A stretch of DNA of 64,000 nucleotides from Ranitomeya imitator (GCF_032444005.1 NC_091288.1:44826001-44890000); one strand, 5' to 3'; counted from the stretch's first letter, positions 48,501 to 64,000 are shown. The notes: generated from the letters alone by a model not told the origin. Made by a program: numbers and translations.

Positions 48501-51500
48501 TATACTATGAATGAATTAAAGGGGTTGTCCATTTTTATCTTCATTTTAACAAATGTGTTACACAGAATTTTGTGTCACTTAGTAATACATAAGTATTACA
48601 GGTTCTCCTCGTCCTTCCTCACAGACTGCACAGTTCTCCAGGTCTCAGAATGTCTGCTGATGGAGGAACATGTGACCAGACCCGCCCATCTGCCTCCTCC
48701 AATAGAAAAACAATGCAGATGGACTGGTCTGGTCACATACTTATCCATCAGCAATTATTTTGAGAACTAACAAGTGCAGGAGGAGAACCTTTAGAATTTA
48801 CATATTAGTAAGTGGCACAAAATCAGGTCCCAAACAAAATAAAAAATAAAGATAAAATGGACAACACCTTTAATTATTTTCTACTTTTGACTTTCATTTA
48901 TAAAAGGGTTGTTTAGCTCCTTGAATGTAATTTTTATTTACCAGAAGATTAGAACATTATAAATTAACAAACAAAATAATACTCGCCTTATAGATCCCCC
49001 CATCCATCATGCAGGCACTTATAAGATCCCCTCCAGTCTTGGTATTCTACCCGTCAGTGGTTCTATTATTATTTGTTTTATTCGGTTATATAACGCTGTC
49101 CCCATTGGTGCCCATAATCTATATTCCCTATTAATATATCTTTGGTGTGTGGGAGGAAACAGAAGAATCAGAGGAAATCAAGCAAACACTGGGAGAACAT
49201 ACAAGCTCCTTGCAGATGTTGTCCCTGTCTCTGTTAATCAATCACTGTGCCACCGTGCTGCCCATTGTGACGCGATAGGTGACCACTGTAGACAATAATT
49301 GGCTCCAGCGAACGGCACTGGTGCAGCTAATGTTTGTCTGCAGTGGTCACATATTTTTACTTTATTTTGATGAGCATGAAAAATTTCTAAAAATTTGTTA
49401 TATATATATATATATATTTACTCATTTTGTGACACTTTTTAATTTTCCTTTCAATAGAACAGTATGAGGGCTAGTTTTTTGTGCAGAGTTGTATGTCGTA
49501 TGTGTGGAGAAATGCAGGCACTGCTCATCACCTGCCCAATGCAATCCCAACAGTGAAACATGGTGGTAGCATCATGCTATGGGGGTGTTTTTCAGCTACA
49601 GGGACAGGACAACTGGTTGCCATTGAAGGAAACATGAATGTGGCCAAGTATAGAGATATCCAGGATGAAAACCTCTTCCAGAGTGCTCTGGACCTCAGAC
49701 TTGGCTGAAGGTTCACCTTCCAACAAGACTGACCCTAAGCACACAGCTAAAATAACAAAGGAGTGGCTTCAGAACATCTCTGTGACCATTCTTGACTGGC
49801 CCAGCCTGAGTCCTGACCTAAACCCAATTGAGCATCTCTGGAGAGACCTGAAAATGGCTGTCCACCAACGATCACCATCCAACCTAACGGAACTGGAGAG
49901 GATCTGCAAAGAAGAATGGCAGAGGATCCCCAAATCCAGGTGTGAAAAACTTGTTGCATCATTCCCAAGAAGACTCATGGCTGTACTAGCTCAAAGTGTG
50001 CTTCTACTCAATGCTGAGCAAAGGGTCTGGACACTTATGACCCTGTGCTATTTCAGTTAGTCTTTTTTAATAAATTTGCAAAAATTTCTACATTTCTGTT
50101 TTTTTTTCAGTCAAGATGGGGTGCAGAGTGTATATTAATGAGAAAAAATGAACTTTTTTGAATTTACCAAATGGCTGCAATGAAACAGAGAGTGAAAAAT
50201 TTAAAGGGGTCTAAATACTTTCCGTACCCACTGTATACAGTAATGTTATATTAAAATGGGGGCAGTAGTGAGACTAAGCGGTTAGTACAGTATAATCTGA
50301 TGAGTGATGGACTCCAAAAGTCATCTCCAAATGGGATTGTTTTCTGACGAACCTCTATTGTGACAGTGCCTTCTGTAAGATCCTATGATACTTTCAGAAG
50401 TCAGTCTATCCATACCTTGGCATTCATGATGTTCCAAAAATATAATAATAAACCACTTAGCAATGGATGAATTTGGCCTTCGTATGGGTGAACGCATGGG
50501 TAAAAGTTCAGTTGTGAGCCCACTGTTGCAGATTTTAGCTTTCAGCAGAATTATCAGTACTCAGAGATTGTGTGAGAATGAACTGTTGATCTTAAGACAC
50601 GAAGGATCACAGGAAAGAAATGACACGAACAAACCACTGAGAAGTCAAAAAGTACAGTACTAGGAAACTTTAAAAGTTATCACATCGCCATCTGCTGTCT
50701 GCTAAACACAGTCCCCCCACAGTGTATGTGCATGACATTGCATTACATGTATATGTTAGTTACGTATAAACATAATAGCAAATAAATACTTATACTATTT
50801 TCCATCATCGATAAGTGAATTAGACATCATACCATCAGAAGTCCTTGGATCTTCTGCCCGACGTCCTCGGCAATAATATAGTGTTTAGCCATTTTTTCCT
50901 TATCACCAAGACCTTGAATGAAATTGTTTCTTCCATTTTTATTTGCAATTAAATAATTTTCACTCAGCTTATTCATTAAACTTTGCATCATTTCCACGTT
51001 TTGCTTAGCTTTTAGAATCCGGCAGTCCAAATTATACACCAGTTCCTTGGCTTCTTCTATGTAATTGTCCAGATCTTGTGAATACCATGTTAGAAGGGTA
51101 AGCGCTGGCTCCAGCTTCTCATAAATTTGCTTCAGCTCATCATGTACAAGTTCCCTTTCCACTGGTAAGATCGTCTTTTGAATCCTATTGAACCATTGAG
51201 ATATGAGGTCCAGATTTCTAGTGTGCTGTTGAAAAAACATGTCCAAAATTAAGAGGCAAGGTAGCTTAAAAAAATAACATGTTATTTAAATCAGGTTAAT
51301 TTTAAAACATTTTTGTTTTTCTTATATTATTTCTCACTGGCCACTAAAGAAGACACAACAGACAGATCTATTGTGTTTCTAAAATTCAGTAGTCAGCTTT
51401 GCCGTATAGACTGGAGCTGAATAAGCAAAGTCATCTCATTACTGGTATCAACACCATTGAAGTGCCTGAGCCCTAGATAAAGCTCCCATACATATCAGAT

Positions 51501-54500
51501 AGCTGTTGACCAGAAAATAGTTTGGTTAATCGTTCAACCAGCACCTACTGCATCTCTCCCACCTATCCTATGCACAGGAATGTTCTCTCTGCTGAATGCT
51601 CCTGTGTTCTCTCTGAGAGAGCCACTGTTAGAAATCTATAACTCTCAAAATCTCTAAATGGATCAATAGTTCAAAATTGGACATGGCTGATCCTTAACTC
51701 CCCTGACAATCATGTGTCTGGGGCCCCATAAACATTAGATTTTCGTGTGAACTTGATAACAATATAGACTTAAGGGAATTCAAAGTAATCAGTTCTGTAT
51801 CCACATCTCTTGTTCTAACTAAATAGCAGTTACAAAGCATTCTATGCAACTTATTGATCCGGATGGGCACGGTGTAATAGTTGGTTTTCCCTATAGTAGC
51901 ATTTTATAAGCATGAGAAACTGCTAGCAATAATAATTTCAATAACCCACACACATGTACACACACACCTAATTTGCAGCCTTTGCCCCCACCCTGAAAGA
52001 AAGCATCATCGGTGACTTCAGTTTCAGGGCCTGTGCCTGTCCCTGTTCTATGGTTGTCAATTCCAAATGTTAAGATTCTTCTCACTGTGCAACTGTACAA
52101 TATGCACAGTGACAATGTGCTCACTTGCAGGCTCTGATCATAATCTTCTTACAATGTGCACTGACAGTGCACTCTCTTGCCATCTTGTTACTTCTGATCA
52201 GAACTGACGGGGGATTGCACTGTCATTGTACATTAAAAAGAAAAGTGAAAAGTGACAAGATTCTACTGAGCATACATCAGATTTGACAATTTTTGAACAC
52301 TCAGTAGTATAGGGATTAACCCAGCCCGTGACCTGGACATCACTGATAATGCTTCGTTCGCAGCCTCTGCCCCTTGATGACAACTTGTTTGAGTAGCCAA
52401 GAATGGATTCTCAAACTAAGCATCATTAATAAGGACGTAATAAAAACACGCAAAGCAGTTAGATAGGGTAGTGTGGGAACTAAAGGGATTTTTTAATTAA
52501 AGTATATTATTACATTAGATAGAAAGACATTTAGGATTAAAATAAATGTTAGTCTCGGACCATCCCTGTAATATGTAAAATGTTTCATAAGGTGCTCTAG
52601 AAAAGAAGCTAAGTTTTGAACACCACTATGTAATACTTTGCAACATCTGAAGTCCCAAATTGTGAACTAGTCGCAACCCTGATATGCAAACATACATATG
52701 ACCCACCTTCTTATGCAAATACACGTAATTTTTATGGTCCCATTTCTGGGACAGTCTTCTGTAAAACAGCAGTGTTGAAACAAAGGTTTTTAAGGTACCT
52801 TTTGTAGCTCTTTCCTTTTCAGGTACAAATCTTTGGCCTTCTCTGGGATGTCAGACATTTTCAGGAACTGAAGATATTTCACTTCCCGAAGAATAGCTGC
52901 GAGCTAAACGTGAGACATGAAAAATAAAAATTGTAAAGAATCTCAAGCTATAAAAAATATATCACATAGTAAATGATCCTGTGAAATCTAAAATGTATAA
53001 TGTCACAATTTCAACATATTCTGTTGTAAAACTTAGCATCAAATGTTTGTAGCCTGTAGAATTCATTTGCGAATTTTGAGCGTTCATTTCTTGGACATTT
53101 ATACTCTTAGGTAATGAATCTTTCTGCAATTGTGGACAGACGTTATGGCCACTTACATGAATGTCAGCCAGTTAAAAATTCCATACTCATGAACATTTAT
53201 ATTCTTATTGTTGAAATAGCCCCTCATGGGCGGCATCAAATTAATTTAATCAAACATAGATACTGAAACCCAGGGAATACAAGATCTATCAAGAAAGGTA
53301 TGCTCTATGCTCACTGAAATTCTAAAAATGTCACGCAAGACAGATACCGTTGGATTAAAATTAGTTTCATATAATCCATCTTCACCACATTGTAATATAG
53401 GTTGACCCAAATATGATTCACAGACGTCATATAGATTGTCCGACCAGTTGCTGAATGTTTCCTGATCATGAGCATCTAAAAGTTTCATGAATCTATCATA
53501 CTTTTCAAAAATTCTTGTTGCTTCATCATTCTGCAGAGCCCTGTATAAATGATATATACATACATTGTTATAATCTGCAGAGTCCCTGTACTGTGTATAT
53601 ATAAAACATTATTATACACCAAAAGAGCCTTGTAGAATAAATACATTTGTATAAATAAATACATTGTTACATTCTGCAGAGCCCTGTATACTGCATACAG
53701 TTGGGCTAAAAATTTTACATACCCCAGCAGAATTTTTGCTTTCTTGGCCTTTTTTCCAGAGAATATGAATAACACCAAAACTTTTTCTCCGCTCATGGTT
53801 AGTGGTTGGGTGAAGCCATTTATTATCAAACTACTGTGTTTTCTCTTTTTAAATCATAATGACAACCCAAAACATCAAAATGACCCTGATCAAAATTCAC
53901 ATACCCTGGTGATTTTGGCCTGATAACATGCACAGAAGTTGACACAAATGGGTTTGAATGGCTACTAAAGGTAACATCCTCACCTAAGACCTGTTTGCTT
54001 GTAATCAATGTGTGCATAAAAGCTAAATGGATATACTCTAGCCTGGGCATATATACAGGGGTTTAGATTAGTTGAGCTCTTTATTTCCTGCTGCTTAGAG
54101 ACCAGTGATATGAAATATAAATGCTGAAAATACAGCTCTATTAATTCATATGAAAGAGGATTATCTTCTGCCATATGCATCAATAGTGCAGCATTTGCAG
54201 TTTCAAAAAACTGATCTGTCAGTTGTAAGCAACAAACACAGCTTTGCACTGCAATTGTGGAGGATTGCAGGAGAGTTGAGCTCTGCCAGAAACCAGCTAA
54301 CAATGATGTACTACATACGACACAGGCAGCTAGAGTGATGTAGATGGTATAAGATAAATTTGGTCAGGTAGGTGTACTATACGAGAGAGCAGAGAGTGCA
54401 CAGAGACATAAGGTGAATTTTACCCTTAGATTAGCTGAATAATAGCTCAGAGAATTACAGCTAGCCGGCAAGCACACAGTAGATGGGACAGGGGTCTGCA

Positions 54501-56786
54501 GCACTGTGGAGAAGTAAGTGCTGATGGGAAATGTAGTTTTGGCGGATAAGAATAGGACTAGTGATGAGCGAGTGTACTCGTTGCTCGGGTTTTCCCAAGC
54601 ACACTCGAGTGACCTCCGAGTATTTATGACTGCTCGGAGATTTAGTTTTCATTGCGGCAGCTGAATGATTTACAGCTACTAGCCTGCTTGATTATATGTG
54701 GGGATTCCCTAGCAACCAGGCAACCCCCACATGTACTCAGCCTTGCTAGTAGCTGTAAATCATTCAGCTGCCACGATGAAAACTAAATCTCCGTGCAGTC
54801 CTAAATACTTGGAGGTCACCCGAGCGTGCTCGGGAAAACTCGAGCAACTAGTACACTCGCTCATCACTAAATAGGACCACTCATTCAGTCCTGTGAAGTT
54901 GGAGGATAGAGATATAAAAAAGACACATAGGTACAAGAAAGAAACGTTATGTGGGGCTTATTTTATGTATTAACAATAAGTATGCAGTTACTGTGCTTTG
55001 TGAAATATAATGCGAATCAGGGTATAAACTTCCAAGGAAAAAAAAAAAATGTCCCTAAAGGAAGGTGGACAAACCGTTTAGTATACATAAGAAAATACAC
55101 TGAAAATATGCTACAAAATCCATATTCAGCAATTCTCACATTATCCAAACTTTTATGAGCCACATATATGTCCTTTCTATTGCACAACTGCCTTACTCGT
55201 GATTAATGTGCTTGAATGATGATCTGTGTTTCACTAATCGCTCTCTTAATTCGTGAGACCATTTTATATTCCCAGAGATAAGAGGCATGTTTTTATGAAG
55301 CACATTTTCATTTTCTCTCTGAAAGCAAACAAATAAAAATAAATAAAAAATCAATATAAAATAATATCGTAATGTAATATGTAGCAAGAAGGTATGAGGA
55401 GAAAAGCAAAGTAATGTGTAATAAAATAAATTGTAAGATATTGTATTAAGAAGATCTAACTGTACATCTAGAAATGACTCTCTAATAACTCCACGGGTGG
55501 AAAACTTGTTCCTTCCATGGCACAGATAGGCTCAGAAGCAGCTAGACCAGTTTCACAGTGTGAGAGCCATGCTAACCACATCCTAGATCTCACCCACTGT
55601 GCGCGTGGCAAAGGAAAGGGAGTGAGATATCGGAACTGACTGAATTGACCTACATTTTCAGGCTGACCGTGGAGTGAAGCTTTCTATACTTGAATTCTGC
55701 TCAACTGTAAAATCCCTTTAATCCACAATCTGAAAAACTAATTTTGAAACTTTGATGAACTTTCAACTTTATATTTGGAATTAAACTTCAATTCCCTAAC
55801 CAATAGTTTTATCAAAAATCACTTCCTTTACAAAGGAGAGAAATCTAAAAAAAAAATATGAGAGAGCAGGAGACGAGGATTCAAATTCCTTTCACCCAGT
55901 CTCGCTCTTCAGCAAAATACAGTTTCCCATAACTCCTACATTTATTCACCACTTTGATATGCTGTCCGCCAGTCACTATGTCTGACCGTATAGTGGACAG
56001 GGGTGGCCAGATATCCTTGTTGGTCGAGATGCAAGAATTGGTAATCCTTTCTAAAATGGGAAAAAAATCCCTTAATTTTTTTTGACCTGCCTATTTTGAA
56101 GCTTAACGAGTAACCATTGTTTTTTATTTTTATCTCATAAATCAATAATACATATGAAAATAATATATCTTATCAGAGAAATCTTCTTCTCTCTCTTCCT
56201 GGATTAACCTTTTAGTTTCAAGTAGCGAGTAAAATCTGTTTTCAGTAAAGACAGATTAAAGGGCCTAGTTACAGGCTGTGGAACTAATAAATATTGCTAA
56301 AAATGCTTCGATAAATTAATAAGAAAAATCCAAATAATAAAAAAAAACAATAAAATCACTAAAAAAGTGATGTATTATAAAAAAAAATGCAAACAATAAA
56401 AACTATACAATATTGGTAATTCTGAATTCATGGTGATCTGTATTAAAAAAAATGATGGCAATAGTAATCAGTAATTAAAAATTTGCAATCCACAAAAAGT
56501 AAACGGTCGTCACGTAAAAAAAAGAAACTCCCACGTAACTCTGGTTATTGAAATATTATGCGTCTTTAAATGCGATTACCCAAATTTTTTATTGTGCAGA
56601 AATAGTAAAATAATAAATTAATTCATTAATTTGTCAGCACAGTAATTGTACTAAACCACACTGGTTAAGTCATTTACTTGCTATGGTGTTCACCCAACAC
56701 CCACAACCCCCAAAATATTGCTGAACTGATCAATTTTTTCTGCCTCTCCCTAAAAAAGAAGAGAAAAAAAATCTAAAGGTAATTAG

Positions 56787-56850
<64 letters not shown>

Positions 56851-59368
56851 GAGTATATTAACAATAAAACTATAAAACATAAGCTAAGGCTTAAACTGCC
56901 TGTTTGCCTGATTACGGACAGATCTTTGTGTCTATGATTACCTTTACTCAGAGACTAGTGTAACATGCAACCAGAGATTGTAGAATTACAAAGATTTAAA
57001 TGAAGCCTTTTTTTTACATTTGTTTTTATCAAGTTCATTTTGAAACATAAAACAGCAAAAGAAAAGAACAAAGGAAAAAAAATAAAACACATGTAATTTA
57101 AAAAAAAAATCTCAGTTTATCTGTTTCATAAGTATTCGTTAAAAAACTAAATAAAGAGTTATATAATCCTCTCATCCAATCCAATAAGGCGATTTCAAAG
57201 ATTATTGCTTTCTTGAATAAAACTTTACACATGAGGATCGTGTTGGACGTAGGGCATCCTTCTCCTACTAATCAGCAGAATATTTCTCTAGACTGACAGT
57301 GCGGACCCCACCTCCACCCAAGGCTGTGGAGTGGAGGAGTCAGAGTCGCTGTCCATTTTGGTGGAGTCGGTATAAAATGGACCAATTCCAACTCCTAAAA
57401 TATATAATAAATTGGGTTCAGTAGTACAATGCAGGATGTGCTGTTAATGTTTTCAGATGAATTTGGGAAAGTTATGAAATGTCCTATAAATGTCTGTTCT
57501 GTTCCTGATCTAAAGGTACCGTCACACTCAGCGACGCTGCAGCGATACCGACAACGATGTCGATCGCTGCAGTGTCGCTGTTTGGTCGCTGGAGAGCTGT
57601 CACACAGACCGCTCTCCAGCGACCAACGATCCCGAGGTCCCCGGTAACCAGGGTAAACATCGGGTTACTAAGCGCAGGGCCGCGCTTAGTAACCCGATGT
57701 TTACCCTGGTTACCCTTGTAAATGTAAAAAAACAAACACTACATACTTACCTTCTGCTGTCTGTCCTCCGGCGCTCTGCTTTCCTCTGCACTGTCAGCGC
57801 CGGTCAGCCGGAAAGCAGAGCGGTGACGTCACCGCTCTGCTTTCCGACGTCACCGCTCTGCTTTCCGGCTGGCCGGCGCTGACACAGGATGCAGGAGGAG
57901 TGCAGAGAAGCAGAGCGCCGGGGACAGACAGCGGTAGGTAAGTATGTAGTGTTTGTTTTTTAAACGTTTACGCTGGTAAGCAGGGTAAACATCGGGTTAC
58001 TATGCGCGGCCCTGCGCTTAGTAACCCGATATTTACCCTGGTTACCAGTGAAGACATCGCTGAATCGGCGTCACACACGCCGATCCAGTGATGTCAGCGG
58101 GAGATCCAGCGACGAAATAAAGTTCTGGACTTTCCTCAGCGACCAACGATCTCCCAGCAGGGGCCTGATCGTTGGTCGCTGTCACACATAACGATTTCCT
58201 TAACGATATCGTTGCTACGTCACAAAAAGCAACGATATCGTTAACGATATCGTTATGTATGAAGGTACCTTTAGGATCTCGGCTTTTAGTTGAGATGAAT
58301 CTGTGCTGCACTTTATGTACAGTACAGACCAAAAGTTTGGACACACCTTCTCATTTAAAGATTTTTCTGTATTTTCATGACTATGAAAATTGTACATTCA
58401 CACTGAAGGCATCAAAACTATGAATTAACACATGTGGAATTATATACTTAACAAAAAAAGTGGGAAACAACTGAAATGATGTCTTATATATACTGCCTAT
58501 AGTGAGGCAGTGCTGTGGAGTTGGAGTCGTGGAGTCAGAGTCGTGGAGTTTGAGTTGGAAGTCAGGGAAATTGAGGAGTCAGAGGTTTGGATTAATGACT
58601 CCATAGCCCTTCCTCATCCATTTGTCCTCTACATCAGGGGTCCCCAACTCCAGTCCTCAAGGCCCACCAACATGTCATGTTTTCAGGATTTCCTTAGTCT
58701 TGCCCAGGTAATAATTGCATCACCTGTGCAATGCAAAGGAAATCCTGAAAACATGACATGTTGGTGGGCCTTGAGGACTGGAGTTGGGGACCCCTGCTCT
58801 ACATGGCCATTATTGTCACAGGGGGCATCCCTTGCTACCACTCTTTCCTGATACCACACTATAGAACAAAAACATTTTTTAATATCAGTTTGCACATTGT
58901 TTGGCAATATGGTGTTGAAAGATTCCCAGGTTTTAAAAAAGTCTCTAACTCTCTGCTCCTTGGGTATTGAGGCTTCGACCTAATCCATTTTTAATAGTTA
59001 TGACGTTTTTTCCAGAAATAATTTAAAAGGCGGTAGTTGTTCCAGTAACCAAGTATGTAAAAGGCAATTTACTCCTGCAGTCACCACAAAATGGAACAGT
59101 TTGCCCTCTTCGTGCAGTGGCATGTTTTTGGGTCTAGCTAACCAAAGATGGCCCATAGAGGTTCTTGCGGTGCAAAATTAGTTAAGCGTGTCATTATAAA
59201 TAATTGAGTGTGAAGAATTTTTCTACATACTTCTTCCGTTCGGCTCAGATATATTTTCTTGCAATCATAAATTTCTTTTTCAAACATTGCAAGCAGTTTT
59301 CCATAACTTGGGCAAAAGAGAGAATTTATCACTGGACGCTCTAGTAAAGCTCCGAATATCTGCAAAAC
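3294..59368 (-). CDS. DNAH11: Axonemal dynein heavy chain, outer-arm beta type (DNAH11-like); 16 internal exons, partial at both ends
   Basis: 16 GT-AG exons splice into 927 stop-free codons with motifs [61 protein letters not shown] and PLLKSDE typical of DNAH9/11/17. The last exons best match recalled DNAH11. Family is near certain; orthology is less so. Confidence 0.7.
4145..4361 (-). mobile_element. CR1 LINE 3' fragment
   Basis: catagaatcctagaa tail followed by gagttggaagggacc...gtccaaccccctgctc, the reverse complement of a typical CR1 3' end. Confidence 0.75.
4597..4719 (-). CDS. DNAH11: Window exon 15 (VRFIMNE...AIEK), 123 nt
   Basis: Absent from ORF track. ttcaag|GTG acceptor, AAG|gtgagt donor. 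Confidence 0.93.
4807..4965 (-). CDS. DNAH11: Window exon 14 (EMKTLDKE...MSKTG), 159 nt
   Basis: ttttag|GAA acceptor, GGG|gtttgt donor; LRAV.ELQNPA.R.RHW motif. Confidence 0.93.
5258..5335 (-). mobile_element. L2-type 3' tail (SINE or LINE fragment)
   Basis: Reverse complement reads tgtaaagcgctgtggaatatgatggcgctg plus A-rich tail, like the L2 tail at 16440-16487. Confidence 0.6.
5403..6443. mobile_element. Palindromic MITE, AAGGTACC-ended family, composite copy with ~210-bp terminal inverted arms
   Basis: AAGGTACCTTCACAC...GTGTGAAGGTACCTT ends; three ~72-bp hairpins; perfect 40-bp central palindrome near 5780-5820. Confidence 0.88.
8069..8454. mobile_element. Short AAGGTACC-family MITE
   Basis: TA|AAGGTACC...GGTACCTT|TA; arms shared with 5403 and 57513 copies. 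Confidence 0.88.
8655..9534 (+). mobile_element. 5'-truncated CR1 LINE with (CTATGTTA)n tail
   Basis: ORF 8662..9420 encodes CR1 ORF2 C-terminus ([36 protein letters not shown]); octamer tail 9508-9534. Confidence 0.93.
8662..9420 (+). pseudogene. CR1 ORF2 C-terminal fragment, 252 uninterrupted codons
   Basis: ORF track; lacks endonuclease and RT core, so non-autonomous. Confidence 0.88.
10242..11932. mobile_element. Decayed PIF/Harbinger-like MITE hosting a solo LTR near its right end
   Basis: TTA|GGGCTCGTGCACA left end. Right end gtgtgcacatagg is restored when the LTR is removed. Internal ctctgatcaaa motifs also occur at 23530-23920. Confidence 0.4.
10589..11920. mobile_element. Solo LTR, 1332 bp
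   Basis: TGTCA...TGACA ends; perfect 5-bp TSD TGCAC (10584-88 / 11921-25); no coding sequence. Confidence 0.85.
12010..12738 (-). mobile_element. 3' half of a decayed Tc1 (catalytic region plus TIR)
   Basis: TA|CAGTG TIR; minus strand encodes [12 protein letters not shown]...QMDNDPKH...WPSQSPDLN remnants. Confidence 0.85.
12803..13103. mobile_element. hAT-like MITE, relative of the TAGTGATGAGC family
   Basis: TAG...CTA ends; TSD gtaattac/gtgattaa (6/8). Confidence 0.65.
13324..13510. mobile_element. hAT-like MITE (CAGGGGT...AACTCCAGTCCTC TIR)
   Basis: Whole-length inverted symmetry; TSD ctttaaag/cattaaag (7/8). Confidence 0.85.
14868..15899 (+). mobile_element. 5' half of the same decayed Tc1 (TIR plus N-terminal transposase)
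   Basis: TIR homologous to 12010 but in direct orientation; [13 protein letters not shown]...[11 protein letters not shown] remnants; ends at ...DAN. Confidence 0.85.
15900..16487 (+). mobile_element. 5'-truncated L2 LINE
   Basis: ORF 15892..16266 has LHWLPV..R...K, WN.LP..IR, FKK.LKTHLF motifs; tail tgtaaagcgccatggaataaatggcgctat(aat)n. Confidence 0.9.
16711..16794 (-). CDS. DNAH11: Window exon 13 (TSIKDW...RRFAK), 84 nt
   Basis: Absent from ORF track. cattag|ACA acceptor, AAG|gtaaag donor; [15 protein letters not shown] motif. Confidence 0.94.
17335..17612. mobile_element. hAT-like MITE (TAGTGATGAGCGAG TIR)
   Basis: Perfect 8-bp TSD GCAACCAT; long inverted ends. Confidence 0.92.
17873..19502 (-). 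mobile_element. Full-length Tc1-superfamily DD38E (Intruder/IT-type) transposon, 1630 bp
   Basis: TA flanks; ~268-bp TIRs (17873-18140 / 19235-19502); 38 residues between second D and E. Confidence 0.92.
18036..19088 (-). CDS. DD38E transposase, 350 aa, uninterrupted
   Basis: Paired-like [29 protein letters not shown] motifs. Confidence 0.9.
   Translation of the reverse strand: MARKKQLSKEKQVAIITLRNEGQSVRKIVQILKVSPSAVAKTIKRYKETCSPNDRPRKGRPRVISASEDKFIRVTSLRNCKLTAAQIRDQVNAAHSSSSRHISTTTVKRRLCTAGLHGKIAARKPLLRTGNKQKRLVWAKEHKEWTIDQWKSVLWSDESKFEIFGSNHRVFVRRRKGERMDSTCLVPTVKHGGGGVMVWGCFACDTVGDLFKIEGILNQHGYHSILQQQAILSGLRLVGRSFIFQQDNDPKHTSRLCKGYLTKKESDGVLRQMTWPPQSPDLNPIEMVWGELDRRVKAKGPTSAKHLWELLQDCCKTIPGDYLSKLIKRMPRVCKAVIKVKGGYFEEPRI
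20927..21085 (-). CDS. DNAH11: Window exon 12 (THRNISRLE...VIFVR), 159 nt
   Basis: Absent from ORF track. ctgtag|ACC acceptor, CGG|gtaagg donor; LFEV.IPEYKQL.QCR motif. Confidence 0.93.
21605..21666 (+). mobile_element. L2 3' tail fragment
   Basis: Near-identical to the 16437-16487 tail, with (AAT)n. Confidence 0.75.
22684..22770 (-). CDS. DNAH11: Window exon 11 (VKQHEFR...KHLDK), 87 nt
   Basis: Absent from ORF track. acccag|GTT acceptor, AAG|gtatta donor. Confidence 0.92.
23285..23401 (-). CDS. DNAH11: Window exon 10 (ELPEKW...CVLFE), 117 nt
   Basis: tcttag|GAA acceptor, GAG|gtgaga donor. Confidence 0.93.
24915..25078. mobile_element. Short hAT-like MITE
   Basis: CAGTGGCGGA...TGCCCCTG ends; TSD acagtagt/acagtaat (7/8). 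Confidence 0.7.
25220..25594. mobile_element. TTAA-site MITE with AGGG ends (T2/Kolobok-like)
   Basis: TTAA|AGGGAACCTGTCATG...CATGACAGGTGCCCT|TTAA. Confidence 0.85.
27463..27521. repeat. (AT)n microsatellite
   Basis: Directly visible. Confidence 0.98.
27690..28218. mobile_element. T2/Kolobok-like MITE
   Basis: TTAA|AGGGAATCTGTC...GACAGATTCCCT|TTAA. Confidence 0.85.
28334..28655. mobile_element. Whole-length palindromic T2/Kolobok-like MITE
   Basis: TTAA flanks; ORFs 28318(+) and 28370(-) give near-identical peptides because of the palindrome. Confidence 0.9.
28726..28945 (-). CDS. DNAH11: Window exon 9 (T+VNELDEFI...YAQLE), 220 nt, phase 2/0
   Basis: actcag|T acceptor completes codon AGT; GAA|gtaagt donor. 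Confidence 0.92.
29746..30693 (-). mobile_element. Non-coding Penelope-like insertion with a degenerate hammerhead and ~30-bp inverted ends
   Basis: Minus strand CTGATGA-A-GAAG..CTTT-GAAC-CGCCTTG; inverted match 29749-29775 vs 30651-30674; ACCGG at both flanks. Confidence 0.5.
31300..31573. mobile_element. Palindromic PIF/Harbinger-like MITE
   Basis: GGCTACGTTC...GAACGTAGCC ends; flanks TTG / TTA. Confidence 0.75.
32601..32770 (-). CDS. DNAH11: Window exon 8 (INIYESLY...DVTC+AG), 170 nt, phase 0/2
   Basis: cctcag|ATC acceptor, AG|gtaact donor; [11 protein letters not shown] motif. Confidence 0.93.
33049..34694 (-). mobile_element. Full-length Tc1 DD34E, 1646 bp, ~215-bp TIRs; transposase broken by two nonsense codons
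   Basis: TA|CAGTT...AACTG|TA. ORFs 33867..34346 and 33327..33830 are in one frame, with TGA at 33867-69 and 33327-29. Confidence 0.92.
35709..36093 (+). mobile_element. Non-autonomous Helitron with internal tandem repeats
   Basis: A|TC start; CCCGAT-8nt-ATCGGG hairpin at 36063-82; CTAG|T end; no TSD. Confidence 0.85.
36142..36948. mobile_element. Solo LTR, 807 bp
   Basis: TGTTG...TAACA ends; TSD attgg/gttgg; same family as 60098-60867 in opposite orientation. Confidence 0.85.
37230..37810. repeat. Purine-rich ~20-bp minisatellite (ggagaacatatgggggcaggat)
   Basis: Directly visible; source of several low-complexity ORFs. Confidence 0.92.
39624..39878 (-). CDS. DNAH11: Window exon 7 (LDVDEMEEL...HFKKQ), 255 nt
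   Basis: atgtag|CTC acceptor, CAG|gtaaag donor; YLW.DD..EFM motif. Confidence 0.92.
40339..41496. mobile_element. Non-autonomous piggyBac-like element
   Basis: TTAA|CCCCTT...AAGGGG|TCAA; no coding capacity. Confidence 0.6.
41596..43221 (+). mobile_element. Second full-length DD38E transposon, 1626 bp, frameshifted
   Basis: TA|CAGTACAGACC...GGTCTGTACTG|TA. ORFs 42010..42660 and 42597..43061 are split by a 1-bp loss near 42565 relative to the 17873 copy. Confidence 0.93.
44165..45816 (+). mobile_element. Full-length Tc1 DD34E, 1652 bp, 33-bp TIRs
   Basis: TA flanks; TIRs differ at one base. Confidence 0.94.
44524..45561 (+). CDS. Tc1 DD34E transposase, 345 aa, uninterrupted
   Basis: TDETK, MDNDPKH and SPDLNPIE with 34-residue spacing. 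Confidence 0.92.
   Translation: MRSKELSIEVKQNILRLKKKKKSIREIADMLGVAKSTVGYILRKKEWTGKLGNSKRPGHPRMTTVVDDRRILNLVKKNPFTTSTEVQNTLSEVGVSVSKSTVKRRLHDSKYKGFTSRCKPFINTKNRQARVKFAEKHLKKPAQFWKSILSTDETKINLYQNDGKKKVWRRKGTAHDPRHTTSSVKHGGGNVMAWACMAFNGTGSLVFIDDIRADKSSRMNSEVYRDILSAQIQPNAAKLIGRRFIVQMDNDPKHTAKATQEFMSAKKWHILQWPSQSPDLNPIEHAFHLLKSRLKTERPTNKQDLKAAAVKAWQSIKKEETQRLVMSMGSRHKAVIASKGFATKY
45990..47220 (-). mobile_element. Heavily decayed Tc1 remnant
   Basis: NPIENLWS remnant in ORF 46104..46301; boundaries approximate. Confidence 0.6.
47565..47897 (-). CDS. DNAH11: Window exon 6 (SNQQLF...KTTYQ), 333 nt
   Basis: ttgcag|AGC acceptor, CAG|gtattt donor; inside ORF 47547..47930. Confidence 0.92.
48520..48869. 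mobile_element. T2/Kolobok-like MITE
   Basis: TTAA|AGGGGTTGTCCATTTT...AAAATGGACAACACCT|TTAA. Confidence 0.8.
49130..49240 (-). mobile_element. SINE central-domain fragment (V-SINE-like)
   Basis: gtgtgggaggaaac...gcaaacactgggagaacatacaa resembles the recalled V-SINE core. Confidence 0.5.
49495..50233 (+). mobile_element. 3' half of a decayed Tc1
   Basis: [15 protein letters not shown] and [15 protein letters not shown] remnants; CACTG|TA end. Confidence 0.85.
50833..51225 (-). CDS. DNAH11: Window exon 5 (HTRNLDL...IQGLLM), 393 nt
   Basis: caacag|CAC acceptor, ATG|gtatga donor; inside ORF 50827..51246. Confidence 0.9.
52799..52903 (-). CDS. DNAH11: Window exon 4 ([11 protein letters not shown]...KELQK), 105 nt
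   Basis: Absent from ORF track. gtttag|CTC acceptor, AAG|gtacc donor; LREVKYL motif. Confidence 0.93.
53348..53540 (-). CDS. DNAH11: Window exon 3 (G+ALQNDEA...NFNPT), 193 nt, phase 2/0
   Basis: atacag|G acceptor completes codon GAG; ACG|gtatct donor; open frame. Only partly caught by the ORF track. Confidence 0.88.
53698..54040. mobile_element. Tc1-like TIR/subterminal fragment
   Basis: TA|CAGTTGGGCTAAAAATTTTACATACC; no partner end found. Confidence 0.55.
54559..54869. mobile_element. hAT-like MITE (TAGTGATGAGCGAG TIR)
   Basis: Perfect 8-bp TSD AATAGGAC; same family as 17335. Confidence 0.93.
55197..55318 (-). CDS. DNAH11: Window exon 2 ([12 protein letters not shown]...HINH+GA), 122 nt, phase 0/2
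   Basis: ctttcag|AGA acceptor, GA|gtaagg donor; HKNMP motif. Confidence 0.92.
56793..56847. repeat. (AT)n microsatellite
   Basis: Directly visible. Confidence 0.98.
57513..58271. mobile_element. AAGGTACC-family palindromic MITE, 759 bp
   Basis: TA flanks; two ~72-bp hairpins; duplicated central GTCACCGCTCTGCTTTCCG. Confidence 0.9.
58320..58488. mobile_element. Solo DD38E TIR fragment
   Basis: TA|CAGTACAGACCAAAAG followed by ~170 bp matching the 41596 end. Confidence 0.9.
58635..58796. mobile_element. hAT-like MITE, 13324 family
   Basis: Perfect 8-bp TSD CTCTACAT. Confidence 0.92.
59231..59368 (-). CDS. DNAH11: Dynein heavy chain window exon 1 ([12 protein letters not shown]...SRTEE), 138 nt, phase 0/0
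   Basis: tttcag|GTT acceptor, GAA|gtatgt donor; inside ORF 59138..59377. Confidence 0.9.
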
Positions 59369-60012
59369 CTGAAACATAGGAAGATTTGAGGTGTATTTTT
59401 ACAAATATTGCATTTACATATGGCACATAAATCATGTTTTACTACCATTTCCTGCAGTCATACAGCACTTTGAAAAGTATTCATACCCCATACATTGCTT
59501 CATGTTACACCCACAATTTGAAATGTTTTTATTGGTATTTTATGTGATATACCAACACAAAGTAGCACGTGTTTGTAAAGTGTAAAGGAAAGGATACATA
59601 GTTTTTAAAATATTTTAGAAATATCAATCTAAAAATTGTGACGTGCATTTGTATTCAATCCCCAGTAGGCTGATACCCCTAAATAAAATCCTGGGAGTGA
59701 CTAATTGCCTCCAGAAGTCACATAATTAGTCAATTGAGTCCACCTGTGTGTAATCTATTTAATTATTTAATTTATTCTGAATATAACTACAGCTGTTCAG
59801 TGAAGACCTCAGAGGTTTGTTTGGGAACATTAGGGATCAAACAGCATCATGAAAATCAAGGAACACGCCAGACACGTCAGGGATAAAGTTGGGGATACAA
59901 GGGAAACAGGGTTAGATAATGAAAAAATAGCCCAAATCTCTGAATATCTCTTGTAGTACTATTCAATCAATCATCTAAAATAGCAGGAGTATGGCACAAC
60001 TGCAAATATACC

Positions 60013-61325: not shown

Positions 61326-62205
61326 GTACCAATACATGGCCATCCACCTAAATTGACACCCCAAGCAAGGAGAGCACAAATTGGAGAAGCAGTCAAGTCA
61401 TAGTCACCTGGAGGACCTGCAGAGACCTAAAACTTGGGTGGAAGAATCTGTCTACAGAACAACTATTAGTGGTATACTCCACAAATCTGGCCTTTATGGA
61501 AGAGTGGCAAGAAGAAAGCAATTTTTTTAAAGTCTTATTTGCAGTTTACAAAAAGCCCTGTAGGGAACACAGGTAGCATGTGGAAGAAGCTACTCCAGCT
61601 GGATGAAACCAAAGTAAAACTTTTTGGACTAAAGGTAAACACTATGTGTGGCAAAAAACTAACACTACACATCACCCTAAAAATCACCATCTCCACCGTC
61701 AAACATGGTGGTGGCAGCATCATGCTGTGGGGAGGCTTTTCTTCAGCAGGAACAGGGAAGCTGGTCAGAGTTAATGGGAAGATGGATGGAGCTAATTACA
61801 GAACAATCCTGGAGGTAAACCTGTTAGAGGTGGCAAAAGACTTGAGACCGGGGTGTAGGTTCACCTCCCAGCAGGATGACGACTCTAAACATACTTCCAG
61901 AGCAACAAAGGCATGGTTTAGATCAAAGCATATTCATGTATGTGAATGGCCCAGTCACAGTCCAGACCGAATTCCTATTGAAAATTTATGGCCAGACTTG
62001 AAAATTGCTGTATACAGACACCTCCATCCCATCTCCCTGAGCTAGAGCTAGTTTGCAAAGATGAATGGGCAAAATGTCAGGTTCTAGATGCAGAAAAGAT
62101 AAATATCTTTGTACCATGTTAGCCAGTAGATAGAAAAATATTTAGAATTGAGAGTCCTCAGTGGTTGATACCTTTTAATGCATAACTGAAATGAAGGTAA
62201 CAAAT

Positions 62206-62244
62206 TGCAAGCTTTCGAGACTACTCAGGTCTCTTCATCAGGCA
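62206..62244 (-). ncRNA. Minimal type I hammerhead ribozyme motif, sense to the dynein pre-mRNA
   Basis: UGC-CUGAUGA-A-GAGAC-loop-GUCUC-GAAA-GCUU-GCA: complete core, 5-bp helix II, palindromic AGCU helix III, 3-bp helix I. Activity untested. Confidence 0.75.
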
Positions 62245-62509
62245 TTGACTAATACAAAATCTGAAGAATCACATATTTATACACAACACAACAGAAAGAT
62301 AATGCAATGGATAATAAGAAAAAAAATTGTGCACGTTTCTTCAGAAGTGGTTTTAGTTCCATAAAGATGCCGTATATTCTGGTATCCTCCATTTTGATAC
62401 AGAAAAGATACATATTTTTGTACTGTGTTAGCCAGTAGATTATCCATTGCATTATCTTTCTGCTGTGTTGTGCATAAATTTGTGATTCTTCAGAAGTTGT
62501 ATTAGTCTA

Positions 62510-62548
62510 TGTCTGATGAAGAGACCTGAGTAGTCTCGAAAGCTTGCA
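62510..62548 (+). ncRNA. Minimal type I hammerhead ribozyme motif, antisense to the gene
   Basis: Identical core; helix I UGU/GCA with one G-U pair. Confidence 0.72.
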
Positions 62549-64000
62549 ATTTGTTACCAACTTTTCAGTTAGGCATTAAAAGGTATCAATTACTGAGGAC
62601 TTTCAATTCTAAATATTAGGCTCTAGAAGGACAGCTAATTAACAGAAGAGCTGTGGATGCCGTCAAGTAAGAGGTGGTACTCCCACTCCCATCCAGCGGC
62701 CACAGACAGCTGTCGTGGCCAATGGACTTGGATTTGCCAATCGATTCCCACCAACTCTAATGTTCAGTTTTCACAGACTATCCGACAAATGTCAGGGTAC
62801 ACCCAAACATCATTATGTTCATATTTTCATATTTTATGTTATCCTTATTTCTCTCACAATTGTTGGAGAACAAGAGTCGTGGGAAAAGTTGCTCCTGCTC
62901 GAAAAGGAAGTCATCGAGGTATCATCAAGAGTATGTTAGGAAATTGCTGTGTGTGTAGTTCCCCAACGTACCAGCAAAAGGACACTGAAGTACAAATAAA
63001 ATCGTAAAGCGCAATCATAACACTTGTATTTTTTTTATTCTTCCATTTCTGTAATCAGTTCAGACGCATAAAGGCGAGAATGATATGCTAATCGAGTCTA
63101 ACATTTTTTTAAAAAGAGGATTAATTTCCGCCGTAATAACACTCCAAATATTTATTTTCATGTGCACAATGTGAAGGGGGCTCCGCCAGGAAAGCGGGAT
63201 CTGCCAAAGATTCTGAGCTTTTTTTTTTTCTTCCGAACAAACGCACTCAGTGGCTTTCAATGGAACATGAAACCAAGCACTTCACTCAGATGTGTGTCAG
63301 CTTTCATCAGAGCTCAATACAAGCGGCTTGACTCTTGTGTAGATAAGGTTTCAAGCACTTTTCAGAGAGCCTCTTTATCCAGTAAAAATGAAGACACATT
63401 ATGGCTGTTATTAAACTATTGTGCCGGAGTAATATGCTGATAACGTGCAGTCAATGAGCAGCCAGCTATTTCACCGCGCTTCTTCTGATTGCGTTTCCTT
63501 TGTAACAGGATGAGATGTTGCAGATTGCTGAAGGCTTTGAATGTGGGATGTAGGAGGTCACCTATCCTACAAGTACTTTGCACTAAACCGCTTGGCGAGA
63601 ATCTCTTTGTCAGCCTGTGTCCATCAAAACAAAATCATCTTCCAGAAATGTTTGTTCTATTCCTGCAGACTTGGATATGCAGCAATCATTTAGATGTTTA
63701 GCAATGCTCGCCATCCTAAGAAGCCTGGCAGCTGGAGAACATACGAGAAAAGGGTCCTCTTTTTGATCTACCTTCAGTATCGTACATGGAGCGGATTAAA
63801 AGAAAGGGAGAGTTTGCATTAAGATGCCGACTAGGAAACTTTGCGATACTGGTGAAAGATATAACTACCGGTATTTGTCACACAACCAAAAACAATCCAT
63901 TACTGCTATAGAACCAGGAGGATAACGCATGTTCAATTGAAATCCTTTCACGGGAACCTGTCAGGAACTTTAGGGTTAGCAAACTCATTACATTACTGGG

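What the first reader, a model, noticed from the sequence alone, without database searches (positions are those of the whole stretch)
62091..62617. 527-bp fold-back element with hammerhead ribozymes in both polarities
Seen: two 179-bp inverted arms, each with a complete core (CUGAUGA / helix II / GAAA / palindromic AGCU / CUU site). Arms differ at ~14 positions by hand count, but the 46 nt covering the core are identical. There is a 40-bp internal direct repeat, a candidate 12-bp TSD (10/12) and no ORF. Established: Penelope-like elements and retrozymes carry minimal type I hammerheads that cleave as dimers, and dual-polarity hammerheads in rod-like RNA typify viroid-like replicons. Inference: the simplest origin is a PLE insertion with an inverted end. 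Even so, any transcript, including the dynein pre-mRNA, carries one ribozyme plus its exact antisense, a self-masking switch that could cut the intron co-transcriptionally before the second arm is made. If the whole unit is multicopy, it is a candidate new non-autonomous ribozyme-driven element.
Basis: partly seen in the sequence, partly recalled or inferred. Interest (0 to 1): 0.75.

Follow-up and report, generated by a model that had tools for sequence, protein, structure and literature searches.

The report
Head-to-head Penelope-type hammerhead repeat insertion
This is one old, non-coding insertion of a small frog repeat that carries a minimal hammerhead ribozyme motif, laid down as two inverted copies in the way Penelope-like retrotransposons insert; it is an ordinary example of a known kind, and nothing suggests the ribozyme cuts the dynein pre-mRNA here.

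Summary
There are two 179-nt inverted arms (165/179 identical). Each carries a complete minimal type I hammerhead, with an identical 46-nt stretch over the core. There is also a 45-nt direct repeat, a 10/12 target-site duplication and no coding capacity.

The better parse is asymmetric. On the minus strand, 62440→62091 is about 1.13 units of a ~309-nt repeat: one full monomer plus a 46-nt "tail". On the plus strand, 62439-62617 is a 5'-truncated 179-nt copy of the same repeat. Both 3' ends point outward, 72 and 118 nt past the predicted cut site.

That is the published signature of Penelope-like element (PLE) integration: both target strands are nicked and extended, and reverse transcription starts at two sites that bracket the tail. 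The host site is a decayed Tc1 transposon in an intron of a minus-strand dynein heavy-chain gene.

The "self-masking switch" idea fails. In both transcript directions the antisense arm is made first. The motif also has no helix III of its own and needs a same-sense partner.

Core conservation between the arms is not significant. Copy number could not be tested. The scan has already noted many such elements on other DNA of this frog genome.

The parts
62079..62090 (.). Left copy of the target-site duplication (AGGTTCTAGATG), inside the decayed Tc1 transposase sequence
   Evidence: 10/12 match to 62618-62629. Offset (0,0) ties for the top score of 10/12, with (-2,-2), among 289 offsets. Chance is about 1e-4 per 12-mer pair.
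62091..62136 (-). The 46-nt 'tail': the 3' extension of the minus-strand copy beyond the end used by the plus-strand copy. It repeats the start of the unit, as direct repeat copy D1a plus the pentamer read as AGAAA on the plus strand.
   Evidence: Direct repeat 62087-62131 / 62396-62440, 40/45 identical, spacing 309. It is present at one end only, as described for PLE tails (PMC8557442, PMC11167929).
62137..62315 (-). Left arm: the 179-nt part of the monomer in sense orientation on the minus strand. It contains the hammerhead with the better helix I (C2.1-G1.1).
   Evidence: Inverted repeat I1; alignment; local fold forms helices I and II.
62209..62241 (-). Minimal type I hammerhead core, minus strand. 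The predicted cut is 3' of U17, between 62209 and 62208.
   Evidence: Exact pattern match; descriptor scan.
62316..62395 (-). 80-nt part of the monomer upstream of the arm. It includes a 21-nt stretch complementary to the sequence just 5' of the hammerhead.
   Evidence: Inverted repeat I2, 62248-62268 / 62337-62357, 81% complementary. Its place in the monomer is inferred from the 309-nt period.
62396..62440 (-). Start of the minus-strand copy (direct repeat copy D1b). It is one unit upstream of the tail and meets the plus-strand copy with a 2-nt (AT) overlap.
   Evidence: D1 coordinates, and the arm start at 62439 overlaps the D1b end at 62440.
62439..62617 (+). Right arm: a 5'-truncated 179-nt copy of the same monomer in sense orientation on the plus strand. 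It ends at ...TAAATATT, 72 nt past the cut site.
62513..62545 (+). Minimal type I hammerhead core, plus strand. The predicted cut is between 62545 and 62546. Helix I is weakened by two substitutions (alignment columns 70 and 74).
62618..62629 (.). Right copy of the target-site duplication (AGGCTCTAGAAG).
61470..62090 (+). Host sequence: a decayed Tc1/mariner transposase gene. It continues after the insertion at 62630 onward in the same reading frame.
   Evidence: Pfam DDE_3 hit below the gathering score. It is 67% identical to another Tc1 copy at 49499-49919. The frame is kept across the excised site.

Best explanation
This is a single, old retrotransposition event of a small non-coding repeat with a hammerhead motif and a monomer of about 309 nt. 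Such repeats are called non-LTR retrozymes, or non-autonomous derivatives of the Penelope-like element (PLE) terminal repeat. The PLE machinery integrated it.

Steps, with their basis:
1. A staggered double nick about 12 bp apart was made in a Tc1 remnant. This is inferred from the target-site duplication.
2. Reverse transcription was primed on both target strands from a tandem or circular template RNA. This is inferred from the outward-facing 3' ends; PMC11167929 shows it in vitro for an Anolis PLE.
3. One cDNA started at a site 72 nt past the hammerhead cut position and ran 179 nt. The other started 46 nt further downstream, giving the tail, and ran 350 nt, or 1.13 units. These lengths are read directly from the sequence.
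4. The two cDNAs were joined at a 2-nt AT microhomology at 62439/62440. The sequence shows the junction; the joining mechanism is inferred.

Since then the duplicated parts have drifted about 9% apart.

The hammerheads are family baggage. In the dynein pre-mRNA (minus strand) and in any plus-strand transcript, the antisense arm is made first. The RNA is therefore predicted to fold into a 179-bp hairpin, not an active ribozyme.
For: Ribozyme type. All core positions are present: C3-A9, G12-A14, A15.1/U16.1 and U17. So are the four traits that Cervera & de la Pena list for PLE minimal hammerheads: an extra nucleotide between A9 and G10.1 (an A here), a G10.1-C11.1 pair, a palindromic 15.2-16.2 pair (AGCU), and no helix III loop. 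The same paper reports pairs of minimal hammerheads 100-700 bp apart on opposite strands.

Architecture. The inverted arms have outward 3' ends. The 45-nt direct repeat with 309-nt spacing makes the minus-strand copy longer than one unit. The extension sits at one end only, matching the 30-40-bp PLE tail. That tail corresponds to the stretch between the two reverse-transcription start sites, and both strands are cleaved and extended.

Insertion. The 10/12 duplication abuts the element exactly. The Tc1 frame is kept when the element is removed.

Geometry. The 3' ends lie 72 and 118 nt past the cut site, against about 85-92 nt in the Anolis PLE. An AUG lies inside CUGAUGA, as in that PLE, but here the frame closes after five codons.

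Size. Amphibian retrozyme consensus sequences average 316 bp.

Folding. The whole element folds at -299 kcal/mol, z = -27.
Against: No second copy of the family could be retrieved, so the 309-nt monomer and its multicopy status rest on this locus alone.

The tail is 46 nt, a little longer than the published 30-40 bp.

The target is not the AT-rich ATT site preferred by the Anolis enzyme.

Rfam covariance models do not recognise the motif.

As a circle, the inferred monomer is no more stable than shuffles (z = +0.36), unlike the well-paired circles reported for retrozymes. This copy is decayed, however.

No PLE reverse-transcriptase ORF was looked for or noticed in the window.
Confidence: 0.8

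Rival explanations
1. The 527-bp fold-back is itself the mobile unit. It would be a multicopy, non-autonomous inverted-repeat element, MITE- or Foldback-like or a new ribozyme-driven one, that transposes as a whole.
For: It has long inverted arms and a flanking duplication. Copy number could not be tested.
Against: The inverted repeat is not terminal on the left, where 46 nt of non-inverted tail lie between the duplication and the arm. DNA transposons have symmetric termini. The asymmetry and the 309-nt direct period fit PLE integration. No transposase-type terminal motif was seen.
Confidence: 0.05
2. A solo copy inserted first, and a later DNA-level inverted duplication (replication template switch or repair) created the second arm.
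For: Fold-back duplications do arise at the DNA level. The arms differ by 8%, so the timing is not fixed by the arms alone.
Against: The 10/12 duplication flanks the composite and not one arm. The divergence of the arms (7.8%), the direct repeat (11%) and the duplication (2/12) is mutually consistent with one event. The 3' ends of both copies abut the flanks, as expected for priming on both strands.
Confidence: 0.08
3. The element works. Either it is a ribozyme switch that cleaves the dynein intron co-transcriptionally, or it is a relic of a viroid-like replicon with hammerheads in both polarities.
For: The 33-nt core has 0 mismatches against 14/146 elsewhere (Fisher P = 0.051). The probability of no mismatch in a pre-specified 46-nt window is 0.013. 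In isolation, the local 55-nt fold forms helices I and II.
Against: The antisense arm precedes the sense ribozyme in both transcript directions (coordinates; gene strand).

There is no helix III without a same-sense partner, and none lies within the 64-kb window, so none is near it in the same transcript. Single minimal hammerheads were inactive in vitro, and dimers were only weakly active.

A 46-nt clean run somewhere in the arm has P = 0.19. With helix I included, the ribozyme is not better kept than the rest (P = 0.28).

The element has a target-site duplication and sits in a Tc1 remnant, so it is integrated DNA.
Confidence: 0.03

Closest known systems
Minimal hammerheads (min-HHR) in the pseudo-LTRs of metazoan Penelope-like elements (Cervera & de la Pena 2014, PMC4209133)
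   Same: Type I topology with the full catalytic core. It shares the extra nucleotide between A9 and G10.1, the G10.1-C11.1 pair, a short helix I (3 bp, or 5 bp with one bulge), the palindromic 15.2-16.2 pair with no loop 3, and the occurrence as opposite-strand pairs 100-700 bp apart.
   Different: Helix II is 5 bp, against the 7-8 bp of the Schistosoma consensus families. No PLE ORF is attached to this copy. Cleavage was not tested.
Non-LTR retrozymes of amphibians and other animals (Cervera & de la Pena 2020, PMC7229834; Li, Clavereau & Pollet 2026, bioRxiv 10.64898/2026.07.22.740005)
   Same: A small non-coding unit (about 309 nt here; amphibian consensus sequences average 316 bp) that carries a type I hammerhead needing a dimer. 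The more-than-unit-length copy implies a tandem or circular template. These elements are proposed to be non-autonomous derivatives of PLE terminal repeats.
   Different: Axolotl and newt retrozyme hammerheads keep a 1-2-bp helix III with a palindromic tetraloop and loop 1-loop 2 contacts; this one has the barer PLE-type core. There is no tandem array here, and no sign of a well-paired circle (z = +0.36). Expression and circular RNA were not tested.
PLE integration signature: tandem/inverted copies plus a one-sided 'tail' (Craig et al. 2021, PMC8557442; Frangieh et al. 2024, PMC11167929)
   Same: An inverted 5'-truncated copy lies next to a longer copy. The extension is present at one end only and corresponds to the stretch between two alternative 3' ends. 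Both copies end about 70-120 nt downstream of the hammerhead cut site. There is a target-site duplication.
   Different: The tail is 46 nt, not 30-40. The target site is not obviously AT-rich. The mobilising enzyme is unknown.
Avsunviroidae and other viroid-like circular RNAs with hammerheads in both polarities
   Same: A hammerhead motif can be read on each strand, and the two ribozyme regions face each other in a long hairpin.
   Different: Here the two are one sequence duplicated in inverted orientation within integrated DNA that has a target-site duplication. Each RNA strand holds a ribozyme plus its exact antisense. There is no sign of an RNA replicon.

Membership tests
Hammerhead ribozyme, PLE-type minimal variant (min-HHR) | Conserved catalytic core: C3 U4 G5 A6 N7 G8 A9, G12 A13 A14, A15.1-U16.1, and H17 at the cut site | tested here: met
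   CUGAUGA ... GAAA-GC-UU is present on both strands. The descriptor scan gives 0.017 chance hits per window.
Hammerhead ribozyme, PLE-type minimal variant (min-HHR) | Helix II closed by G10.1-C11.1, with an unpaired nucleotide between A9 and G10.1 | tested here: met
   A, then GAGAC / GUCUC (5 bp) with a 7-nt loop. The traits are listed in PMC4209133.
Hammerhead ribozyme, PLE-type minimal variant (min-HHR) | No helix III of its own; palindromic 15.2-16.2, so that two copies form helix III as a dimer | tested here: met
   A15.1-G-C-U16.1 reads AGCU, a 4-nt palindrome with no loop.
Hammerhead ribozyme, PLE-type minimal variant (min-HHR) | Helix I of about 4-5 bp flanking the core (type I topology) | tested here: inconclusive
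   There are 3 contiguous pairs, or 5 in the left arm and 4 in the right arm if A1.4 is bulged. The right arm has U.G at 2.1-1.1. An unrelated AT-rich metagenome contig (L013) has the same core with a different, paired helix I.
Hammerhead ribozyme, PLE-type minimal variant (min-HHR) | Recognition by curated covariance models (Rfam hammerhead families) | tested here: not met
   No hammerhead hit at the gathering score or at E<=10, even on 71 nt. This is expected for a motif without helix III; the min-HHR needed its own descriptor in PMC4209133.
Hammerhead ribozyme, PLE-type minimal variant (min-HHR) | Self-cleavage at the predicted site | not testable with these tools
   Needs in vitro transcription of a same-sense dimer, or mapping of RNA ends.
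PLE-mediated insertion (autonomous PLE fragment or non-autonomous retrozyme) | Tandem and/or inverted copies with 5' truncation, flanked by one target-site duplication | tested here: met
   A 350-nt minus-strand copy and a 179-nt plus-strand copy lie head to head, with a 10/12 duplication.
PLE-mediated insertion (autonomous PLE fragment or non-autonomous retrozyme) | One-sided 'tail' that corresponds to the sequence between two alternative reverse-transcription start sites | tested here: met
   The 46-nt extension at the left end only is homologous to the start of the unit one period (309 nt) away.
PLE-mediated insertion (autonomous PLE fragment or non-autonomous retrozyme) | Telomerase-like RT and GIY-YIG endonuclease ORF in the element or elsewhere in the genome | not tested
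   The element has no ORF with a Pfam match. The genome could not be searched.
Non-LTR retrozyme | Multicopy family of tandem monomers, each with a hammerhead | not testable with these tools
   There is no other copy in the window, and none in metagenome or viral collections. Only the more-than-unit-length copy hints at a tandem template.
Non-LTR retrozyme | Expression as linear and circular RNA of monomer length | not testable with these tools
   No read data could be reached.

The most novel reading that the evidence does not exclude
The fold-back may be more than debris. One reading is that the 527-bp unit is a multicopy element in its own right. Another is that the intronic 179-bp hairpin is kept because it does something, such as serving as a source of small RNAs or an editing substrate. 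A third is that the mismatch-free ribozyme core (0/33 against 14/146 elsewhere) reflects constraint on a protein-assisted hammerhead.
Probability: 0.05. Interest if true: 0.5.

Novelty: already known. Interest (0 to 1): 0.12.

Why it matters
It matters little on its own. It is a tidy single-locus illustration of how Penelope-type machinery pastes in small hammerhead-bearing repeats: priming on both strands, two start sites 46 nt apart, and a template longer than one unit. Copies like this could be used to map reverse-transcription start sites genome-wide in a frog with a very large repeat load.

It also gives a general caution. In head-to-head PLE insertions, every read-through transcript makes the antisense copy before the ribozyme. 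"Dual-polarity hammerheads" of this kind should therefore not be read as viroid-like or as intron-cleaving switches.

Tried and rejected
Rfam at the gathering score and at E<=10, on 901 nt and on 71 nt, gave no hammerhead family. The MIR8562, snoRNA and MIR1023 hits are hairpin or chance artefacts.

BLAST of the element against the window found no other copy.

Exact-pattern scans of metagenome and viral contigs for the core found none. A relaxed pattern gave 16 loci: 15 chance matches, most of them in GC-rich, apparently bacterial contigs, and one AT-rich contig (L013). L013 has a similar minimal hammerhead but no clear homology outside the core.

Earlier scan notes were searched by sequence and by place; both came back blank.

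The supplement of PMC4209133 is not held, so I could not compare with the Xenopus consensus families.

I tried to fix the insertion boundaries by aligning the flanks to other Tc1 copies at DNA and protein level. The alignments are too weak to separate one duplication copy from two (scores 42-44). They show only that the Tc1 frame continues across the site.

A rod-like or viroid-like fold of the inferred monomer was rejected (z = +0.36).

Special conservation of the ribozyme was rejected as not significant.

Full report
**What is in the sequence**

The repeat finder gives an inverted repeat with arms at 62137-62315 and 62439-62617. The arms are 179 nt, 92% complementary and 123 nt apart. It also gives a 45-nt direct repeat at 62087-62131 and 62396-62440, with 40/45 identity and 309 nt start to start.

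Aligned without gaps, the arms differ at 14 positions, and columns 75-120 (46 nt) are identical. The 33-nt string CTGATGAAGAGACCTGAGTAGTCTCGAAAGCTT occurs exactly twice, at 62513-62545 (+) and 62209-62241 (-). Shuffles of the window gave no match. The whole 554-nt stretch folds into one long hairpin at -299 kcal/mol, z = -27.

**Is it a hammerhead?**

Read as RNA, the motif is: helix I 5' strand, then C3-U-G-A-U-G-A9, an extra A, G10.1-AGAC, a 7-nt loop, GUCU-C11.1, G12-A-A14, A15.1-G-C-U16.1, U17, the cut site, and the helix I 3' strand.

Cervera & de la Pena (PMC4209133) defined the minimal hammerhead of Penelope-like elements (PLEs) by four recurring traits beyond the core:
- a conserved G10.1-C11.1 pair;
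- a palindromic 15.2-16.2 pair;
- no loop 3, so that helix III forms only between two copies.

All four are present here.

A descriptor written from that paper finds only these two sites in the window. About 0.017 hits are expected per random 64 kb on both strands. In isolation the 55-nt segment folds into helices I and II as its minimum-energy structure.

Helix I is short. It has 3 contiguous pairs, or 5 with a bulged A in the left arm. The right arm has two substitutions there.

Rfam's hammerhead models do not see the motif at all, even at E<=10 on 71 nt. That fits a motif without helix III, but it means membership rests on the descriptor alone. A relaxed pattern scan of metagenome contigs turned up one AT-rich contig (L013) with the same core design and a different but paired helix I. 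This is weak outside support.

**A better parse of the element**

The direct repeat is the key. Read on the minus strand from 62440 down to 62091, the order is:
- repeat copy D1b (45 nt);
- 80 nt;
- the arm (179 nt);
- TTTCT;
- repeat copy D1a.

That is one 309-nt period followed by the start of the next, or about 1.13 units of a tandem or circular template. On the plus strand, 62439-62617 is a 179-nt, 5'-truncated copy of the same unit.

Both copies have their 3' ends at the outer edges. The plus copy ends at ...TAAATATT, 72 nt past the predicted cut. The minus copy ends 46 nt further along the unit, 118 nt past the cut. The two meet at 62439/62440 with a 2-nt AT overlap.

Flanking the whole are AGGTTCTAGATG (62079-62090) and AGGCTCTAGAAG (62618-62629), a 10/12 match. 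Chance is about 1e-4 per 12-mer pair, and offset (0,0) ties for the top score of 10/12, with (-2,-2), among 289 offsets.

The arms differ by 7.8%, the direct repeat by 11% and the duplication by 2/12. Pooled, that is 8.9%, consistent with one old event.

**How it got there**

This layout is the published signature of PLE integration. Insertions are 5'-truncated, often in partial tandem, and often have an inverted 5'-truncated copy alongside. A 30-40-bp tail is found at one end only (Craig et al. 2021, PMC8557442).

Frangieh et al. 2024 (PMC11167929) showed that an Anolis PLE protein cleaves and extends both target strands. It starts reverse transcription at two adjacent internal sites about 85-92 nt past the hammerhead cut site, and the tail is the stretch between those sites. 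Here the two 3' ends, 72 and 118 nt past the cut, bracket a 46-nt tail.

As in that PLE, an AUG sits inside CUGAUGA. Here the frame closes after five codons, and no frame in the element has a Pfam match. The 309-nt period is far too short for an autonomous PLE. It is in the range of amphibian non-LTR retrozymes (mean consensus 316 bp), which Li, Clavereau & Pollet argue are non-autonomous derivatives of PLE terminal repeats.

I therefore read the locus as one PLE-mediated, double-primed insertion of such a repeat (confidence 0.8). The monomer, its copy number and the enzyme are inferred.

**Context**

The host site is a decayed Tc1 transposase. It has a Pfam DDE_3 hit (below the gathering score), is 67% identical to another copy at 49499-49919, and keeps its frame across the excised site.

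The surrounding gene is a dynein heavy chain on the minus strand. Exons match these Pfam model positions:

| Pfam model | Model positions | Window coordinates |
|---|---|---|
| DHC_N1 | 317-367 | 59141-59398 |
| DHC_N1 | 363-404 | 55196-55531 |
| DHC_N1 | 408-475 | 53249-53608 |
| DHC_N1 | 505-562 | 50830-51285 |
| DHC_N2 | 52-104 | 4750-4965 |

Positions 1-316 of DHC_N1 must lie further upstream, so the element is intronic by inference.

**Why the switch idea fails**

With the 3' ends outward, the first arm transcribed is the antisense one on either strand. The sense hammerhead lies in the distal arm: 62513-62545 on plus and 62241→62209 on minus. The dynein pre-mRNA therefore makes the mask about 270 nt before the ribozyme.

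The motif also cannot form helix III alone. The transcript holds no second same-sense copy nearby: none lies within the 64-kb window. Single minimal hammerheads were inactive, and dimers only weakly active, in vitro.

The identical core is not good evidence of constraint:
- a 46-nt clean run somewhere in 179 nt with 14 mismatches has P = 0.19;
- the 33-nt core alone gives Fisher P = 0.051;
- the ribozyme with helix I included gives 2/44 against 12/135, P = 0.28.

As a circle, the inferred monomer folds no better than shuffles (z = +0.36), so nothing points to a viroid-like rod.

**Earlier notes of this scan**

Earlier notes describe the genome as a poison frog. They list many hammerhead or Penelope-type insertions on other DNA of it, several with the same head-to-head layout. 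I used them only as leads. None overlaps this locus, and none was tested here.

**Verdict**

This is a real feature of an already described kind. It has low interest beyond being a clean example.

Noticed in passing
window:44515-45558 (+) and window:18039-19106 (-): Two Tc1-like transposase frames are open over 348 and 356 codons, with full HTH_Tnp_Tc3_2 and DDE_3 matches. They may be young or intact Tc1 copies. A further copy at 41992-43058 (+) closely resembles the second one.
   Followed up: partly
window:5460-6390, 8210-8540 and 57400-58350: Stop-free frames in several places share near-identical peptide strings such as [22 protein letters not shown], on both strands. This suggests a short interspersed repeat family present many times in the window.
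   Followed up: no
window:8635-9417 (+): A 261-codon open frame looks like the C-terminal part of a LINE reverse transcriptase but gave no Pfam hit at E<=0.001.
   Followed up: partly
window:37135-37840 (both strands): Long open frames on both strands have a repetitive, proline/serine-rich or glycine/tryptophan-rich periodic pattern. This is probably a tandem minisatellite.
   Followed up: no
L013:130-164 (-): An AT-rich (30% GC) 1-kb metagenome contig carries a minimal hammerhead with the same helix II stem and AGCU/U17, but a different paired helix I and a different loop 2. It lies next to TGT/TGG-rich microsatellite-like repeats and is probably eukaryotic DNA.
   Followed up: partly
window:62248-62268 / 62337-62357: Within the inferred monomer, a 21-nt stretch just 5' of the hammerhead is 81% complementary to a stretch about 70 nt upstream. 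It could be an alternative pairing that competes with helix I, or chance.
   Followed up: no
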